From contig NIVC01000631.1 in NCBI GenBank assembly GCA_002269645.1, positions 17,122-81,121 of the forward strand: 64,000 nt of DNA, in the 5' to 3' direction. Positions 37,763 through 58,700 of the stretch are shown in pieces (the stretch's first letter is position 1; each line of letters begins with the position of its first letter). The notes below the pieces were generated by a model. It saw only the letters and a program-made list of their open reading frames with translations. It did not search any database and was not told the DNA's origin. The position numbers and the translations under genes are program-made. The DNA is from Macrostomum lignano (Eukaryota).

Positions 37763-40700
37763 ATGGCGCCAGTGCATAAGCCGCTGGTCTTGCTGTTGCC
37801 AATTATTTTTCTACTTCCGCTACCGCGTCTCTGCCATTCCGACACCGTTGAGGTTTCCTGGCGCCAGAAGCTGATCAACTTCACGGATAGACACGGCAGA
37901 ACCCAGCATTGGCCAATCCAGGAGCAGAAGGTGTTTACTAAAGGCGACATTTACCTGGGCGGCCTCATGATGGTGCACTCCCGCTCCGAGGACAAGGTCT
38001 GCGGTCGGGTCATGCACCAGGGTGGCCTGCAGGCGCTTGAGGCAATGCTGTACACCATCGACTACATCAACCAGCATGACGTTATTGGCGACGGCATCCT
38101 GCTGGGCAGCTACATCAAGGACGACTGCGACAGGGACACCTACGGATTGGACCAGGCGGTTGACTTCATCAAAGGTGAGTTACAGCTAGACTTTCATTGA
38201 TGTTTTCTTTCACGTCTAGCTTAGCAGCTCCAGCCCTTGTGTATAGTTATATTTTATATAGTCAACTGAATTGACAGAGTGGAATCAGAAATAAATCTTC
38301 CGACCAAACTTCGAAGATGTAATCTAGCTCTAGCCGTTCCCGCTACATTGATGAGCCAGCACACCCGGATGTAGCTAATGAATGAGCCATTCCCGCTACA
38401 CTGATGAGCCGGCACACCCGGATGTAGCTAATGAATTAGCCATTCCCGCTACACTGATGAGCTTGCACACCCGGATGTAGCTAATGAATGAGCCATTCCC
38501 GCTACACTGGTGAGCCGGCACACCCGGATGTAGCTAATGAATTAGCCATTCCCGCTACACTGATGAGTCGGCACACCCGGATGTAGCTAATGAATTAGCC
38601 ATTCCCGCTACACTGATGAGCCGGCACACCCGGATGTAGCTAATGAATTAGCCATTCCCGCTACACTGATGAGTCGGCACACCCGGATGTAGCTAATGAA
38701 TTAGCCGTTCCCGCTACACTGATGAGTCGGCACACCCGGATGTAGCTAATGAATTAGCCATTCCCGCTATACTGATGAGCTGGCACACCCGGATGTAGCT
38801 AATGAATTAGCCATTCCCGCTACACTGGTGAGTCGGCACACCCGGATGTAGCTAATGAATTAGCCATTCCCGCTACACTGGTGAGCCGGCACACCCGGAT
38901 GTAGCTAATTAATTAGCCATTCCTGCTACACTGATGAGTCGGCACACCCGGATGTAGCTAATGAATTAGCCATTCCCGCTACACTGATGAGTCGGCACAC
39001 CCGGATGTAGCTAATGAATTAGCCATTCCCGCTATACTGATGAGTCGGCACACCCGGATGTAGCTAATGAATTAGCCATTCCCGCTACACTGGTGAGCCG
39101 GCACACCCGGATGTAGCTAATGAATTAGCCATTCCCGCTACACTGATGAGTCGGCACACCCGGATGTAGCTAATGAATTAGCCATTCCCGCTACACTGGT
39201 GAGCCGGCACACCCGGATGTAGCTAATTAATTAGCCATTCCCGCTACACTGATGAGTCGGCACACCCGGATGTAGCTAATGAATTAGCCATTCCCGCTAC
39301 ACTGGTGAGCCGGCACACCCGGATGTAGCTAATGAATTAGCCATTCCCGCTACACTGATGAGCCGGCACACCCGGATGTAGCTAATGAATTAGCCATTCC
39401 CGCTACACTGGTGAGCCGGCACACCCGGATGTAGCTAATGAATTAGCCATTCCCGCTACACTGATGAGTCGGCACACCCGGATGTAGCTAATGAATTAGC
39501 CGTTCCCGCTACACTGGTGAGCCGGCACACCCGGATGTAGCTAATGAATTAGCCATTCCCGCTACACTGGTGAGCCGGCACACCCGGATGTAGCTAATGA
39601 ATTAGCCATTCCCGCTACACTGATGATCTGGCACACCCGGATGTAGCTAATGAATTAGCCATTCCCGCTACACTGGTGAGCCGGCACACCCGGATGTAGC
39701 TAATGAATTAGCCATTCCCGCTACACTGATGAGCCGGCACACCCAGATGTAACCAATGAATAGCCAATTCCCGCCACAAAGTCACATAAATCACTACACA
39801 TGCATAAGCTAAATAAATTGAGTCACCACTTCACTCTGTGCAATGGAAAGTCACCAATGTGGCACCTTGCTGTGTCTAGACAGAAGTTTTCCAGAATGAT
39901 TACAATCCGATGAAAGTTTTCCTGAAAAATTATCAAATTTAACGATAAATTTGAGCAAAATAATTTCCCTTTTGCCCAACTATAAGGAAGTTTCCAGACC
40001 AGCCAATTCATTAATCACCCGCAATTTTTGGCCCTAGGCTGCGCCCTTTACTGTTCGATCAATTTAATAATCAATTTCGGAGAAAGCATTCGCGTCAGTT
40101 TCAGCCCGAGACCGATCCTTCCCCAGCAACCCCTAGAGATTAAACATCAGGCAATATTGGCGCAATCAGCAGCGACCCGTGCGGCTCGGACACAGACATG
40201 CGAGCGCCTAGACCGAGTTCGTGATTGATAGCCCCTTTTGACGAATCCTAGTCCCGCCAAAAAGGTCTCGCTTTCATCTTTCTCCGCCTTTGATTGACTC
40301 ATCCCCCAACTTTCAAGTCCTCACTTTGATTGCCTTCGTCAATGAGTATCATCTCTCTATGGGATATTCTACTGGGGATCAATTTCTTAGAAAGGGGAAA
40401 CTTAAAGAGCAGCTGACGAAATCAGTTACAGTCTGCAGAAATTGAAAAGACCTTTCTTACCTAAGCCTAATGTTCGTACAGGCGCTATACATGGCAAGGT
40501 AGCCCTGATTAGCATCAGATCGACTGTCAATGCAATTCCCGCTATTCCCGCTGAAGGTTTCCCTGGGCCTCCCGTTGTATCAGTTTTTTAAATGAAGCTA
40601 TGCTTCCTGGTGAAAGAGAGCGGCAGAGACAGAGACAGTCCCAAGAGTGTTCAGCGCCGATGTCTGATATACGCAGCTTGGAAACCCCTCCGGGACAGGT

Positions 40701-55700: not shown

Positions 55701-58700
55701 GCTCTACACCCTGTATGAGCGCTTGAGTTGTGTGAGTATGAGCTCACGTGTCAGCGGAATTGGTTGTGGGACGATGGTGCCCGCAGCCCTACTGCGAATA
55801 TATTTATATATACCTGCATAGTTTTACAGTAGATAAACCAGAAACTGCAAGTGAAGACTGCTATCGAAAGAAACAAACACCCCACAATTCCAGGTAGAAG
55901 GCGCCGTCACGGTGCAGCCGCTGGCCAAAGAGGTCGAAGGGTTCAAGCGCTACTTTCTCGGCCTCACGCCGGCTGACAACACTCGAAACCCGTGGTTCAC
56001 CGAGTTCTGGGAAGACTACTTCGAATGCCGACTGCCCTGGGCCACGGAGACGCCCTACAACCAGCAGTACTACAGCAGCTGCTCGCCACACCTGCGCATG
56101 GCCGAGACCGATAGCAAGTTCCTGCTCGAGCAGCAGCTGCAGTTCGTCAGCGATGCCGTCATGGCTTTCGCCGTGGCTCTGAAGGTGAGCTTTAGCGCTC
56201 TGGCTAGCGTATAGCAATTAGTTGGAATCCGTGGTGGGAGCACGAGAAATGGCTGCCGTGAATTTTGGCTCCTGGGGATTTTCCCGCCTACAGTATCTTC
56301 TGAGACGAGGACAGTCAGCAAGCCTATTGGTGAACTCGCTGTCAAGCAGCTCGATGCAGCCCGCTTCCAGCAGCAGTCACAGAGTCCTTTATAGTCTGTG
56401 TCCCTGTAGCTAACGCCCCTTATGTAGCTGGCGCCCCCTCTGTAGCTGGTGCCTTCTCTGTAGCTGGCGCCTCCTCTGTAGCTGGCGCCTTCTCTGTAGC
56501 TGGTGCCTTCTCTGTAGCTGGTGTCTTCTCTGTAGCTGGCGCCTCCTCTGTAGCTGGCGCCTTCTCTGTAGCTGGTGCCTTCTCTGTAGCTGGTGCCTTC
56601 TCTGTAGCTGGTGCCTTCTCTGTAGCTGGTGTCTTCTCTGTAGCTGGCGCCTCCTCTGTAGCTGGCGCCTTCTCTGTAGCTGGCGCCTTCTCTGTAGCTG
56701 GCGTCCCATCTGTAGCTGGCGTCCCATCTGTAGCTGGCGTCCCATCTGTAGCTGGCGTCCCATCTGTGGCTGGCAAAGCTCGGCGGACAAATCTCACAGA
56801 CTCACTTGTAACAATACTAGATATTTAAGCATCAATCCGCAATGCATTGTAGAACATGCGTCAGAAGGTCTGCACTAAAGGCCTGAGCAGAGAGCAATGC
56901 ATTGAGCATCTGGCTACGAATGGGGCCGAATTGTTGCAGGAGCTGAAGACGGTCACCTTCACGGGTGAGTTAGACTTGCTGTGATACTTACTGTTCTAGG
57001 AATTGCGTATTATAGCAAAGAAGCAAAGAGAGGAGAGGGTTAGCATCAGACGCACTAGTAAACCATAGTCAGCTGAAGCAGAACGTCGCTACACTTGATA
57101 TTCTTAGAAATGGCTGGAGACTGATAGGGAACGCCTGTTTTTCGTATCTTAGTGTACTCCAGAGAGCGCATAGCGCTGGATGAGGATTTGCCATAGACAA
57201 ATTGGGGCGAGAAAAATCCGATTTCTTCAGAGCAAGAACAAGGGAAAACATGCACGAAGTCCACGCTTGTGTGTCGGTGTTGAGAGTCGGATCAATAATA
57301 ATATTCGCAGAAGGCCTACGGGCACCCTGAAATGGCCCCATAACCAGCGCTGACGGCAGTTCTGCTCATTCCGCTGACTCCTGAGCAACATACAAGCGCA
57401 CCAATACTGTGCGCAGGCACGCAATGATACATACGCTCACACAGGGTGTACAGCGGCCCTTTGACTTTCTAATCGTCAGGCATGTACACTCTAAGTGTCA
57501 TGGGGGTTGGTCCTCAGGGTTTGAATCGCACGACGAACCCAAATAAATCATCTATTTCAATAGGATGTTTTTGTCGTCTCCTAAATGAGGGTTTTTTCGA
57601 TTTGGTTGACTTTCTGCAGGTTATTTATTTGTCTGTTTGACTAAAATAGATTTCTGGCTGACAGCACACAGATCGCTAGCAACATATCGGCTTAATTATC
57701 TAATTCTGTTTCTCCAGAGCGCGCGCCTAACGAAACAAATAGCAACGGCTAGCAGAGGGACTCGATCGCAATTCCCTTAGTAATCCCCATAGTTGCTGCT
57801 TGATGCAGATTATCTCTACAATAGCTGAATAGAGGCCTGCAAGTCCAGATTGCTGAAAATTGATGCAGAGCAGCTGATAAAAGAATAAATAGCCGCCCCC
57901 CCCGATCGAAGAAATACGAGTGCTATCTGAAGAGCTGCGAGATACGAGTACGAGAGTTATGGCCTTGCACTGCTAGCACTCAACTGAGGAACTATTCAAG
58001 TACATCTTGAGCTGCCATAGTAGGTACAAAGACCACTAGGAACACTTGGTTACAGAAGGACGTTACACTCTGGATTCGTGTCAGAATCAGAAGAGAAGTC
58101 TTTATTGTTTTAAAAGTGTTTATTGACTTTTTTTGCTCACTCATTTTTTAGAATGACTGGGCATCTTGTGAGACAGATTTTCAAGGAAATGGACCAATGT
58201 GTTCGGCTCCTGTATATGGTCTCTAGGCTTCAAATATTTTCAGAAACACGTCTCTGGTAATGAGACTACGAGCGTACTATTATATACCTTTTCAACTTCG
58301 GAGTCGTCAAAAGTGAGTTCAAATTCGTCAGCGTATGCAAAACTATATAGCGCTCAAGGGGAAGAGAAGGAGTGTCTATGGTAAGTTTTTAGAGAAAGTG
58401 ACTTCGAATTCGTCTAAGTAAGTGAAATTCGTCAGTGCAAATACAGCCTGATCAGAAAAAGTGTTTGCTTTGTCCATGGTAAGAAAAGGTGTTTATGGTA
58501 AATTTAAGTAAGAAAGTGAGTTGAAGTTCGTCTGTGGAAAAGTAGCCCAATTTCCTGAAATCTTCATTTCATGCTTTGATTGTTGTCAGAGATGCCCTAC
58601 ATGACAACAAACAGCCAATGTAACGCACAAAGTCCCGTCAAGCCGACGACTGATTGCCTGTGTTGTCACAGCAGGAGCAGCAGGAAAATCTCCAACAAGC

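What the first reader, a model, noticed from the sequence alone, without database searches (positions are those of the whole stretch)
37763..56184. mGluR-like receptor with the non-glutamate (mXR/mangetout) ligand pocket
Seen: GGLQALEAML has Ala where mGluRs have Arg (GIQRVEAM, mGlu1 R78), and EQQLQFVSDAV has Gln where mGluRs have Lys (DSKMGFVINA, K409). The alpha-amino-acid contacts look retained (GAPSS Ser, FST Thr, PSD Asp, KYG Tyr, GSDGW Asp). Established: loss of these two gamma-carboxyl contacts defines Drosophila mXR/mangetout, which ignores glutamate, responds to L-canavanine and was first described as an insect receptor. Inference: an mXR orthologue in a non-insect, probably flatworm, genome, sensing an unidentified amino-acid-like ligand.
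Basis: partly seen in the sequence, partly recalled or inferred. Interest (0 to 1): 0.7.

Follow-up and report, generated by a model that had tools for sequence, protein, structure and literature searches.

The report
Flatworm class IV (mangetout-type) mGluR gene
This is a nine-exon flatworm gene for a glutamate-receptor-like sensor whose binding pocket has lost the two residues needed for glutamate; it belongs to a receptor class already known from nearly all invertebrate phyla, so it is a correct identification of an ordinary member of a known family.

Summary
All quoted motifs lie on the + strand at the stated places. In real alignments the window protein has Ala at mGlu1 Arg78 and Gln at Lys409, and it keeps the Ser/Thr/Asp/Tyr/Asp contacts for the alpha-amino-acid group.

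In bootstrapped trees the protein groups with insect mangetout/mGluR-B proteins (protostome clade 100%). Canonical group I, II and III mGluRs, including the DmGluRA type, fall outside. Its closest relatives are Macrostomum lignano proteins (73% and 61% identity) and planarian GCR106.

- The gene is larger than reported: nine exons, 37763-61906, including the cysteine-rich domain and the 7TM domain.
- As assembled, it is not an intact reading frame. Exon 8 has five single-base frame breaks within 222 nt of very G+C-rich sequence, and the C-terminal tail has a sixth. These are probably consensus errors, but a pseudogene is not excluded.
- It is not new. Ramos-Vicente et al. 2018 defined this clade as mGluR class IV, present in all bilaterian phyla they sampled except vertebrates, with exactly these two substitutions. 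A planarian member was placed in class IV in 2022.

The one modest addition is that the 13-residue pocket is identical from flatworm to fly, which argues for a single conserved ligand that is still unknown.

The parts
37763..38174 (+). Exon 1: start codon, signal peptide (MAPVHKPLVLLLPIIFLLPLPRLCHS) and first part of the Venus-flytrap domain. Contains GGLQALEAML (38021-38050), with Gly at the mGlu1 Tyr74 / mGlu4 Lys74 position and Ala at Arg78. Also DDCDRD, with Asp at the Trp110 position. Ends in phase 1.
   Evidence: tblastn of M. lignano P0001/P0002; alignment to mGlu8
38175..51826 (+). Intron 1 (13.65 kb). It is packed with minisatellites: 53-bp x27 at 38331-39778, 18-bp x38 at 43208-43876, 18-bp x45 at 47569-48379, (ACAG)n at 49251-49441, 14-bp x58 at 49938-50765, 20-bp x22 at 51350-51789. 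No missing exon: P0002 aligns without a gap across the E1/E2 junction.
51827..51969 (+). Exon 2: loop with the conserved Cys (GQVQCRKRND) and GVVGAPSS (Ser164/Ser165 equivalents, 51904-51918).
52815..52985 (+). Exon 3: ISFFSTAPQLSD (Ser186/Thr188), RTIPSD (Asp208), DSKYG (Tyr236).
53078..53240 (+). Exon 4: variable part of lobe 2. Ends in phase 1.
53742..53887 (+). Exon 5: VVVFGSDQE (Ser at the Glu292 position) and GSDGWGAR (Asp318; Arg323 retained; 53831-53845).
55894..56184 (+). Exon 6: NTRNPWFTEFW and EQQLQFVSDAV (Gln at the Lys409 position, 56128-56160).
56853..56964 (+).
59612..60376 (+). Exon 8: end of the flytrap domain, nine-cysteine domain, TM1-TM4. It has five single-base frame breaks in C/G runs: about 59650 (-1), 59692 (+1), 59770-59785 (+1), 59846 (+1), 59871 (-1). 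The conserved peptides DGPPRYRVLNF and GECRCWVC lie in the shifted frames. As assembled, the frame entering the exon meets a stop at about 59872.
   Evidence: Pfam NCD3G and 7tm_3; nine Cys only after stitching the frames
61409..61906 (+). Exon 9: TM5-TM7 (RNIPESFNESKHIGF, GPKLYI) and a short tail. The in-frame stop is at 61904-61906. Similarity to the M. lignano tail (STRDGSV...DISTQAD) continues in another frame at about 61890-62024, which is a sixth apparent frame change, in a CAG-rich stretch.

Best explanation
The locus 37763-61906 (+) is a nine-exon gene for a class C G-protein-coupled receptor of mGluR class IV, the mX/mangetout type, in a macrostomid flatworm or close relative.

Shown here: the domain architecture (signal peptide, Venus-flytrap domain, nine-cysteine domain, 7TM domain), the pocket residues, and the phylogenetic position.

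Inferred from the family: it works as a disulfide-linked dimer. An alpha-amino-acid-like ligand is held by the conserved Ser167/168, Ser190/Thr191, Asp211, Tyr239 and Asp329 (window numbering). The flytrap closes, and the cysteine-rich domain passes the movement to the 7TM domain, which activates a G protein. The fly orthologue needs G-alpha-o in vivo.

The ligand is very unlikely to be glutamate, because the two cations that hold glutamate's distal carboxylate are Ala91 and Gln426 here. The distal pocket also has Gly87, Asp123 and Ser303, and it keeps Arg334. This pocket is identical from flatworms to flies, so the natural agonist is most likely one conserved endogenous small molecule that has not been identified, and not a plant toxin.

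The five frame breaks in exon 8 and the one in the tail are most likely local consensus errors of the assembly, so the animal probably has an intact gene.
For: Architecture: Pfam ANF_receptor 3.5e-56, NCD3G, and both halves of 7tm_3. All splice sites are GT/AG with matching phases. After frame stitching the protein has nine Cys in the NCD3G region and the KTNRI, NESKHIGF and PKLYI motifs.

Pocket: the signature G-A-D-S-S-S-T-D-Y-S-D-R-Q is identical in the window and in 117 of 120 relatives, spanning insects, crustaceans, chelicerates, molluscs, an annelid, a nemertean, a planarian and Macrostomum. It is also identical in tardigrades, a nematomorph and ticks. Canonical receptors have Arg and Lys at the two key columns.

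Phylogeny: flatworm clade 100%, protostome mX clade 100%, joined by amphioxus, hemichordate and echinoderm proteins at 88%. Groups I-III lie outside (names).

Literature: class IV is defined by loss of Arg78 and Lys409 with the backbone contacts kept, and is present in all bilaterian phyla sampled except vertebrates (PMC6307864). DmXR is not activated by glutamate or any of the 20 standard amino acids, is activated by canavanine at EC50 0.5 mM, and is expressed in brain, which suggests an unknown endogenous ligand (PMC2695807). G-alpha-o is required (PMC3646046).

For the error reading of the frame breaks:
- All are +/-1 changes in short C/G runs or low-complexity sequence, in the most G+C-rich 100-nt stretch of the CDS (75%).
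- The shifted-frame peptides are still highly conserved (DGPPRYRVLNF against M. lignano DGPPRYKILNF; AKRQINAGECRCWVC against AKRQINPGECRCWVC).
- There is no stop codon or frame break in the other roughly 2.4 kb of CDS.
- Five uniformly placed indels would fall within 222 nt with P of about 3e-4.
Against: As assembled, the gene cannot encode a full-length receptor. The entering frame of exon 8 stops at about 59872, before the cysteine-rich domain.

Other conserved coding sequence in the window shows no frame break: lipoyl synthase (about 1.1 kb, 60-62% GC) and a carboxypeptidase exon (0.8 kb, 61% GC). So the assembly is not generally indel-prone, and real lesions in a redundant paralogue cannot be excluded. 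M. lignano has at least three related gene models.

I found no independent reads, transcripts or second assembly of this species. No ligand, coupling or expression was tested. The trees are distance-based NJ, not ML or Bayesian. D. melanogaster mtt itself was not among the retrieved sequences; the tie to DmXR rests on NCBI 'mangetout' names in other Diptera, beetles and ticks, and on a D. mauritiana orthologue.
Confidence: 0.72

Rival explanations
1. It is a class IV/mX-type mGluR by descent but a pseudogene or decaying paralogue. On this reading the frame breaks are real, and the locus makes no receptor, or at most a secreted flytrap-only fragment.
For: There are six apparent frame changes, and a stop at about 59872 in the frame that enters exon 8. 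Control genes in the same window are clean. Macrostomum has several paralogues of this gene (P0001-P0003), so one copy could be dispensable.
Against: Neutral decay should scatter lesions and erode the protein sequence. Here five of the six lesions lie within 222 nt (P of about 3e-4), and all are single bases in C/G runs. The peptides encoded in the shifted frames remain conserved. The other roughly 2.4 kb, including all 13 pocket residues, the nine Cys and the 7TM motifs, is undamaged. The M. lignano model P0001 also lacks about 20 residues, including the first Cys, at exactly this place, which hints at a recurrent technical problem with this G+C-rich segment.
Confidence: 0.23
2. It is a canonical glutamate-activated mGluR (class I, II or III) that is merely divergent.
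For: The best solved-structure matches are mGlu8, mGlu4 and mGlu3. Databases label most relatives 'mGluR 2-like', 'mGluR 8-like' and similar.
Against: Both distal-carboxylate contacts are lost. Identity to canonical receptors is 35-38%, against about 50% to mX-type proteins of other phyla. It is excluded from the group I, II and III clades, while a canonical class II flatworm receptor (Schistosoma P0237) falls where expected.
Confidence: 0.02
3. It is a taste-type detector of L-canavanine or a similar dietary toxin, as first proposed for Drosophila DmXR.
For: DmXR is activated by canavanine in HEK cells, and the window protein has the same pocket residues.
Against: The pocket is invariant in marine and freshwater animals that never meet legume seeds, and in nerve-cord-expressed amphioxus genes. 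The canavanine EC50 is 0.5 mM. Fly canavanine taste was later explained by GR8a/GR66a/GR98b (PMC4660205). DmXR is also expressed in brain.
Confidence: 0.03

Closest known systems
mGluR class IV (Ramos-Vicente et al. 2018, eLife, PMC6307864), seeded by the insect mX receptors of Mitri et al. 2004
   Same: Same architecture. Arg78 and Lys409 are replaced while the backbone contacts are kept. It is separate from classes I-III in trees. The distribution matches: protostomes plus invertebrate deuterostomes, with no vertebrate member among my hits.
   Different: Nothing essential differs. That study sampled no flatworm. In my trees the mX-type receptors (Ala/Gln pocket, Arg323 kept) form one subclade. 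A second group of non-canonical receptors with other pocket residues lies next to it, and it probably also belongs to their class IV.
Drosophila DmXR / mangetout (mtt)
   Same: Orthologous clade (100% bootstrap for protostomes). All 13 pocket positions examined are identical in fly-clade members. Overall identity is about 49-50%.
   Different: Different phylum. Nothing is known about ligand, coupling or expression for the flatworm gene. The fly proteins have much longer N- and C-terminal extensions (1,200-1,400 aa against about 900). D. melanogaster mtt itself was not retrieved.
Macrostomum lignano A0A1I8J0Y6 (P0001) and A0A1I8IL26 (P0002); Schmidtea mediterranea GCR106 (P0010); Schmidtea SMESG000022915001, called class IV in PMC9750798
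   Same: These are the nearest relatives: 72.7%, 60.5% and 49.9% identity, with the same pocket. Flatworm clade 100%.
   Different: The window protein is not identical to any M. lignano entry. It is either another Macrostomum species or an unannotated paralogue. The M. lignano models are themselves flawed: a 290-aa insertion, a RING-domain fusion, and a tandem fusion. I could not check whether GCR106 and SMESG000022915001 are the same gene.
Human mGlu8 / mGlu4 (closest solved structures)
   Same: The ligand-binding domain aligns end to end (E = 3e-76). The alpha-amino-acid contacts, the cysteine-rich domain and the 7TM motifs are conserved.
   Different: The distal pocket differs: Lys74 to Gly, Arg78 to Ala, Lys409 to Gln, Asn at the Glu292 position to Ser, and Ser at the Trp110 position to Asp. 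Only the Arg/Lys at position 323 is kept.

Membership tests
Class C GPCR, mGluR-like | N-terminal Venus-flytrap (ANF_receptor) domain | tested here: met
   Pfam PF01094 at 3.5e-56. End-to-end alignment to mGluR ligand-binding-domain structures.
Class C GPCR, mGluR-like | Nine-cysteine domain (NCD3G) between the flytrap and the 7TM domain | tested here: met
   PF07562 matches weakly in the unstitched ORF (21.6 bits, below the cutoff). After frames are stitched at the break sites, all nine Cys are present and align with relatives. This holds only in the conceptual, frame-corrected protein.
Class C GPCR, mGluR-like | 7tm_3 transmembrane domain with conserved motifs | tested here: met
   PF00003 profile positions 1-130 in exon 8 (4e-36) and 129-251 in exon 9 (3e-28). 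KTNRI, NESKHIGF and PKLYI are present.
mGluR class IV / mX (mangetout) receptors | Arg78 (mGlu1 numbering) replaced by a non-basic residue | tested here: met
   Ala91.
mGluR class IV / mX (mangetout) receptors | Lys409 replaced by a non-basic residue | tested here: met
   Gln426.
mGluR class IV / mX (mangetout) receptors | Contacts for the alpha-carboxylate and alpha-amino groups retained (Ser165, Thr188, Asp208, Tyr236, Asp318) | tested here: met
   All are present.
mGluR class IV / mX (mangetout) receptors | Groups with the insect mX receptors, apart from classes I-III, in a phylogeny | tested here: met
   NJ with 200 bootstraps: protostome mX clade 100%, plus invertebrate deuterostomes at 88%; named class I, II and III receptors lie outside. 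This is a distance method only. The published Bayesian and ML trees for the class agree (PMC6307864).
mGluR class IV / mX (mangetout) receptors | Not activated by glutamate; activated by another amino-acid-like ligand (canavanine for DmXR; antagonist N-methyl-arginine) | not testable with these tools
   Needs heterologous expression. Predicted from the pocket only.
mGluR class IV / mX (mangetout) receptors | Intact, expressed gene | tested here: inconclusive
   There are six apparent frame changes, five of them in exon 8. Their pattern favours assembly error, but no independent sequence was found.
Canonical mGluR classes I-III | Arg78 and Lys409 both present to bind the distal carboxylate of glutamate | tested here: not met
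   Ala and Gln in the window. All named class I-III receptors in my alignments have Arg, and nearly all have Lys.

The most novel reading that the evidence does not exclude
The 13 pocket residues are identical from Macrostomum to Drosophila, ticks, tardigrades, molluscs and annelids, and 10-12 of the 13 are kept in starfish, amphioxus and hemichordates. So all mX-type class IV receptors may recognise one and the same endogenous small molecule, still unidentified. That would be a bilaterian signalling system that vertebrates lost, with canavanine only an accidental weak mimic. A transparent, transgenesis-capable flatworm such as Macrostomum would then be a good animal in which to find the ligand and the cells that use it.
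Probability: 0.45. Interest if true: 0.6.

Novelty: new member of a known kind. Interest (0 to 1): 0.2.

Why it matters
For the scan, this is a correct call on an ordinary gene.

Two things are still useful:
- Papers as recent as 2024 (PMC10815649) repeat that DmXR homologues exist only in insects. The database survey here shows how wrong that is, and that the pocket is frozen across more than half a billion years. That makes the missing ligand the real open question.
- Anyone annotating this genome should know that exon 8 and the tail of this gene carry frame breaks. These will wreck automatic gene models, as seems to have happened to the M. lignano models.

Tried and rejected
1. A mini-intron to rescue the frame change at about 59770-59785. 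No GT/AG pair gives matching phases, and any such intron would remove the first conserved Cys (reasoning).

2. A search for same-species protein fragments across exons 7-8. It returned nothing, but local phmmer showed the index had missed even P0001 (6e-69). The null therefore only suggests that no near-identical fragment is in the database.

3. Exact look-ups of the exon-1 ORF and of P0001, to find the source contig or an independent assembly. Neither is on record, so the species could not be named and the frame breaks could not be checked against other data.

4. The 1.3-kb ORF at 12272-13570 (69% GC) as a control for G+C-rich sequence. I discounted it, because G+C-rich DNA stays open in several frames (a second ORF overlaps it), and only 112 of its residues match a Pfam family.

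5. A look-up for D. melanogaster mtt in the clusters of the Drosophila hits. It is not listed.

6. Pfam on ORFs in the introns and flanks, and Rfam on the whole window. Nothing significant.

7. Structure prediction was not run. Sequence similarity to solved mGluR domains is already decisive, and the tool returns no coordinates with which to inspect the pocket.

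
Full report
THE OBSERVATION

The window is eukaryotic DNA, about 46% G+C and rich in mini- and microsatellites.
- GGLQALEAML at 38021-38050
- GAPSS at 51904-51918
- GSDGW at 53831-53845
- EQQLQFVSDAV at 56128-56160

The short motifs FST, PSD and KYG lie in one exon at 52815-52985. Six exons with canonical GT/AG borders and matching phases give a 442-aa protein that begins with a signal peptide: 37763-38174, 51827-51969, 52815-52985, 53078-53240, 53742-53887 and 55894-56184. 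It matches Pfam ANF_receptor at 3.5e-56. Against solved structures it matches mGlu8 best (3e-76), then mGlu4/3/7/6/2, then mGlu1/5 (about 1e-59), then the calcium-sensing receptor (1e-41).

In the printed alignment to mGlu8, the window has Ala opposite the Arg of HRLEAM and Gln opposite the Lys of EGKVQFV. The Ser, Thr, Asp, Tyr and Asp that hold the alpha-amino-acid group are all kept. That these columns are mGlu1 Arg78 and Lys409 is established knowledge, and Ramos-Vicente et al. name the same two residues. My own alignments confirm it: named class I, II and III receptors carry Arg and Lys in those columns.

THE WHOLE GENE

tblastn with the closest relatives and inspection of splice sites add three exons:
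- Exon 7, 56853-56964.
- Exon 8, 59612-60376: the end of the flytrap, the nine-cysteine domain and TM1-4.
- Exon 9, 61409-61906: TM5-7 and a short tail, with the stop at 61904-61906.

Pfam finds NCD3G and both halves of 7tm_3 in exons 8 and 9. The relatives align without gaps across every junction, so no exon is missing. Nearly every intron carries a minisatellite.

FRAME BREAKS

Exon 8 cannot be read in one frame. M. lignano P0001 reads "LTGMDFQFTKHSSDGPPRYKILNFQR...AKRQINPGECRCWVCVACPEYA" continuously. In the window the matching pieces are spread over three frames:
- LTGMNFEFTQFN in frame 0
- DGPPRYRVLNFRR in frame 2
- SGYEWVQVGLY...LLRFA in frame 0
- AAAPPLSACQPACQVGAKRQINA in frame 1
- GECRCWVC in frame 2
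- ECGEYAIV... and everything downstream in frame 1

That is five changes of +/-1 base, at about 59650, 59692, 59770-59785, 59846 and 59871. Each is in a short C or G run or in GCGCGGCGCCGCCGC. Together they lie in the most G+C-rich part of the coding sequence (69% overall, 75% at the peak). As assembled, the frame that enters exon 8 meets a stop at about 59872. Only after the frames are stitched does the protein have the nine cysteines of the NCD3G domain.

A sixth apparent change lies in the tail. The frame-1 stop is at 61904-61906, but similarity to the M. lignano tail (STRDGSV...DISTQAD) continues in frame 2 at about 61890-62024, after a CAG-rich stretch.

ERROR OR DECAY?

In favour of assembly error:
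- Five of the six lesions fall within 222 nt of a 2.7-kb coding sequence. Simulation gives P of about 3e-4 for uniform placement.
- All are single bases in homopolymer or low-complexity context.
- The peptides encoded in the shifted frames are still almost identical to M. lignano.
- The rest of the gene has no stop, no frame break, and every functional residue I checked.
- The M. lignano model P0001 also lacks about 20 residues, including the first Cys, at the same spot. This hints that the segment is a recurrent technical problem.

In favour of real lesions:
- Other conserved genes in the window are clean. Lipoyl synthase and a cytosolic carboxypeptidase exon, about 1.9 kb at 60-62% G+C, show no break.
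- Macrostomum has several paralogues, so one copy could be dispensable.

I found no independent sequence of this species. One search was a word-index miss, as one search shows. Searches found nothing. I put about 3:1 on error.

WHAT IT IS

A search of 5.8 billion proteins gave three M. lignano proteins as best hits. After these came a long list of insect proteins that NCBI names mangetout, mGluR B or "mGluR 2-like". Mixed among them, with similar scores, were crustaceans, chelicerates, molluscs, the annelid Owenia, the nemertean Lineus and planarian GCR106. Identities are as follows:

| Compared with | Identity |
|---|---|
| M. lignano A0A1I8J0Y6 (P0001) | 72.7% |
| M. lignano A0A1I8IL26 (P0002) | 60.5% |
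| Other phyla's mX-type proteins | about 50% |
| Amphioxus and hemichordate relatives | 43-45% |
| Canonical mGluRs | 35-38% |

I tabulated 13 pocket positions (mGlu1 numbering): the Tyr74/Lys74 position, Arg78, Trp110, Ser164, Ser165, Ser186, Thr188, Asp208, Tyr236, Glu292, Asp318, Arg323 and Lys409. The window reads G-A-D-S-S-S-T-D-Y-S-D-R-Q, and so do 117 of the 120 hits. Tardigrades, a nematomorph and ticks read the same. Every one of the 13 positions is at least 99% conserved, against 35% of ligand-binding-domain positions in general, while overall domain identity to non-Macrostomum members is only about 54%.

PHYLOGENY

A search of cluster representatives supplied canonical receptors, which I named from their source records:
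- Class I: Salmo and Saccoglossus mGluR1.
- Class II: Xiphophorus mGluR2, the ant DmGluRA-type receptor and a Schistosoma receptor.
- Class III: Anguilla mGluR4-like, amphioxus GRM8 and Saccoglossus mGluR8-like.

I built two trees. The first was NJ with 57 taxa, 818 columns and 200 bootstraps. The second had 71 taxa and 851 columns and added the deuterostome hits from a search with the amphioxus protein. The results:
- Window + M. lignano P0001: 100%. Adding P0002: 100%. Adding planarian GCR106: 100%.
- Protostome mX clade: 100%. It splits into Spiralia and Ecdysozoa (99%), in an order close to the species tree.
- An amphioxus, hemichordate and echinoderm clade joins the protostome clade at 88%.
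- Classes I, II and III are outside.

The deuterostome members keep Ala at Arg78 and Gln at Lys409. Hemichordates match 12 of the 13 pocket positions, amphioxus 11 and starfish 10. That test fails to refute, so the orthology claim stands.

HOW IT PROBABLY WORKS

Shown here: the architecture, the pocket and the clade. Everything else is inferred from the family.

The receptor should work as a dimer. The loop Cys in GQVQCRKRND is present. A ligand with an alpha-amino-acid head would be held by the conserved Ser, Thr, Asp, Tyr and Asp. Flytrap closure would be passed through the cysteine-rich domain to the 7TM domain and on to a G protein.

For the fly orthologue, the literature reports (PMC2695807; PMC3646046):
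- Glutamate and all 20 standard amino acids are inactive.
- L-canavanine activates at EC50 0.5 mM.
- L-arginine is inactive, and N-methyl-arginine is an antagonist.
- Thr176Ala abolishes the response.
- The receptor is expressed in brain.
- G-alpha-o is needed.

In the window protein the two cations for a distal carboxylate are gone, and there is an Asp at the Trp110 position. A ligand with a neutral or basic distal group therefore seems more likely than an acidic one; this is inference. The pocket is identical in animals that never meet legume seeds, so canavanine is unlikely to be the natural agonist. The canavanine role is also disputed in flies: GR8a, GR66a and GR98b together account for canavanine taste (PMC4660205; discussed in PMC3646046).

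COMPARISON WITH WHAT IS KNOWN

The 2009 and 2011 papers called the clade insect-specific, and a 2024 paper still does. However, Ramos-Vicente et al. 2018 (PMC6307864) named the clade mGluR class IV. [quoted passage not shown] They reported that Arg78 and Lys409 are replaced in all members while the backbone contacts are kept, and they predicted a non-glutamate amino-acid ligand. They sampled no flatworm, but a 2022 paper places a Schmidtea protein in class IV and finds none in schistosomes (PMC9750798).

The window gene is therefore a new member of a known class. What my survey adds is modest:
- A macrostomid member.
- The strict identity of the whole pocket across protostomes.
- The indication that the Ala/Gln mX type is one subclade, lying beside a second group of non-canonical receptors with other pocket residues.

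VERDICT

The gene is larger than reported. It is not an intact frame as assembled, probably because of local consensus errors. Novelty is low and interest is low (0.2). The open question that remains interesting is the identity of the conserved ligand.

Noticed in passing
window 18458-26750, flanked by 18104-18472 and 26758-27298: An 8.3-kb satellite array: a 272-bp unit in 30.5 copies at 99% identity. It is bracketed by (AGAT)n and (ATAG)n microsatellites of about 370 and 540 bp.
   Followed up: no
window 7753-9885; also 5793-6136, 6768-7360, 11342-12235: A 16-bp unit repeated 133 times (2.1 kb), plus several 21-bp minisatellites in the upstream third of the window. Most long ORFs there are only translated repeats.
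   Followed up: no
window 38331-39778, 43208-43876, 47569-48379, 49938-50765, 51350-51789, 52066-52769, 53260-53688, 56423-56757: Introns 1, 2, 4 and 6 of the receptor gene each carry one or more minisatellite arrays (units of 14-53 bp, 17-58 copies). Introns 2 and 4 consist almost entirely of one array each.
   Followed up: partly
window 27918-28334 and 30333-31022, - strand: A two-exon lipoyl synthase gene (Pfam LIAS_N and Radical_SAM, with contiguous profile coverage), about 7 kb upstream of the receptor gene on the opposite strand. It is intact and was used as a control for assembly quality.
   Followed up: partly
window 10345-11148 and 12272-13570, - strand: Exons of a cytosolic carboxypeptidase (CCP/Nna1-like) gene: Pfam Pepdidase_M14_N, the start of Peptidase_M14, and TPR_CCP1_N. 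The upstream exon is 69% G+C and stays open in two overlapping frames.
   Followed up: partly
window 54498-55257 and 62622-63379: A dispersed repeat of about 760 bp at 96.6% identity. One copy is in intron 5 and one lies just downstream of the gene. Each has internal inverted segments of about 115 bp, so it is probably a non-autonomous transposable element. Its ORFs match no Pfam family.
   Followed up: partly
window 46271-46756, - strand (inside intron 1): A 161-aa ORF that does not look like translated repeat and has one hydrophobic segment (TTLLVVTIVLLIAMIAMYLI). It matches no Pfam family, so it is unclear whether it is a nested gene.
   Followed up: partly
window about 61850-62024: The C-terminal tail changes frame relative to M. 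lignano. Frame 1 stops at 61904-61906, but STTRDGSV...DISTQAD continues in frame 2 up to a GT at about 62024. This could be a sixth consensus error, or a real indel of 3n+1 bases in a CAG-rich stretch that shortens the tail.
   Followed up: partly
proteins P0001, P0002/P0401, P0003 (Macrostomum lignano, UniRef): The M. lignano models of this family look mis-built. P0001 has a roughly 290-aa insertion between exons 1 and 2 and lacks the first Cys of the nine-cysteine domain. P0002 is fused to RING/TRAF-type domains. P0003 is two partial copies in tandem.
   Followed up: partly
proteins P0196 and P0265 (Lingula anatina): The brachiopod members fall inside the protostome mX clade but have a remodelled pocket: Glu at Ser164, Lys at the Glu292 position, Ala at Arg323 and Arg at Lys409. 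This is the only lineage seen that departs from the frozen signature.
   Followed up: no
proteins P0152, P0166, P0200, P0204, P0210, P0232, P0399, P0392, P0364 and others: A second group of non-canonical mGluR-like receptors lies next to the mX clade. It has Asp at the Lys74 position and varied residues at Arg78 and Lys409, and it is found in myriapods, chelicerates, crustaceans, insects, annelids, molluscs and nemerteans. Amphioxus and hemichordates have a further non-canonical type (P0338, P0327, P0332).
   Followed up: partly
tool behaviour: the search for homologous proteins returned no hit for a 195-aa query that local phmmer matches to P0001 at 6e-69. Nulls from the word index with short queries should not be read as absence.
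   Followed up: yes
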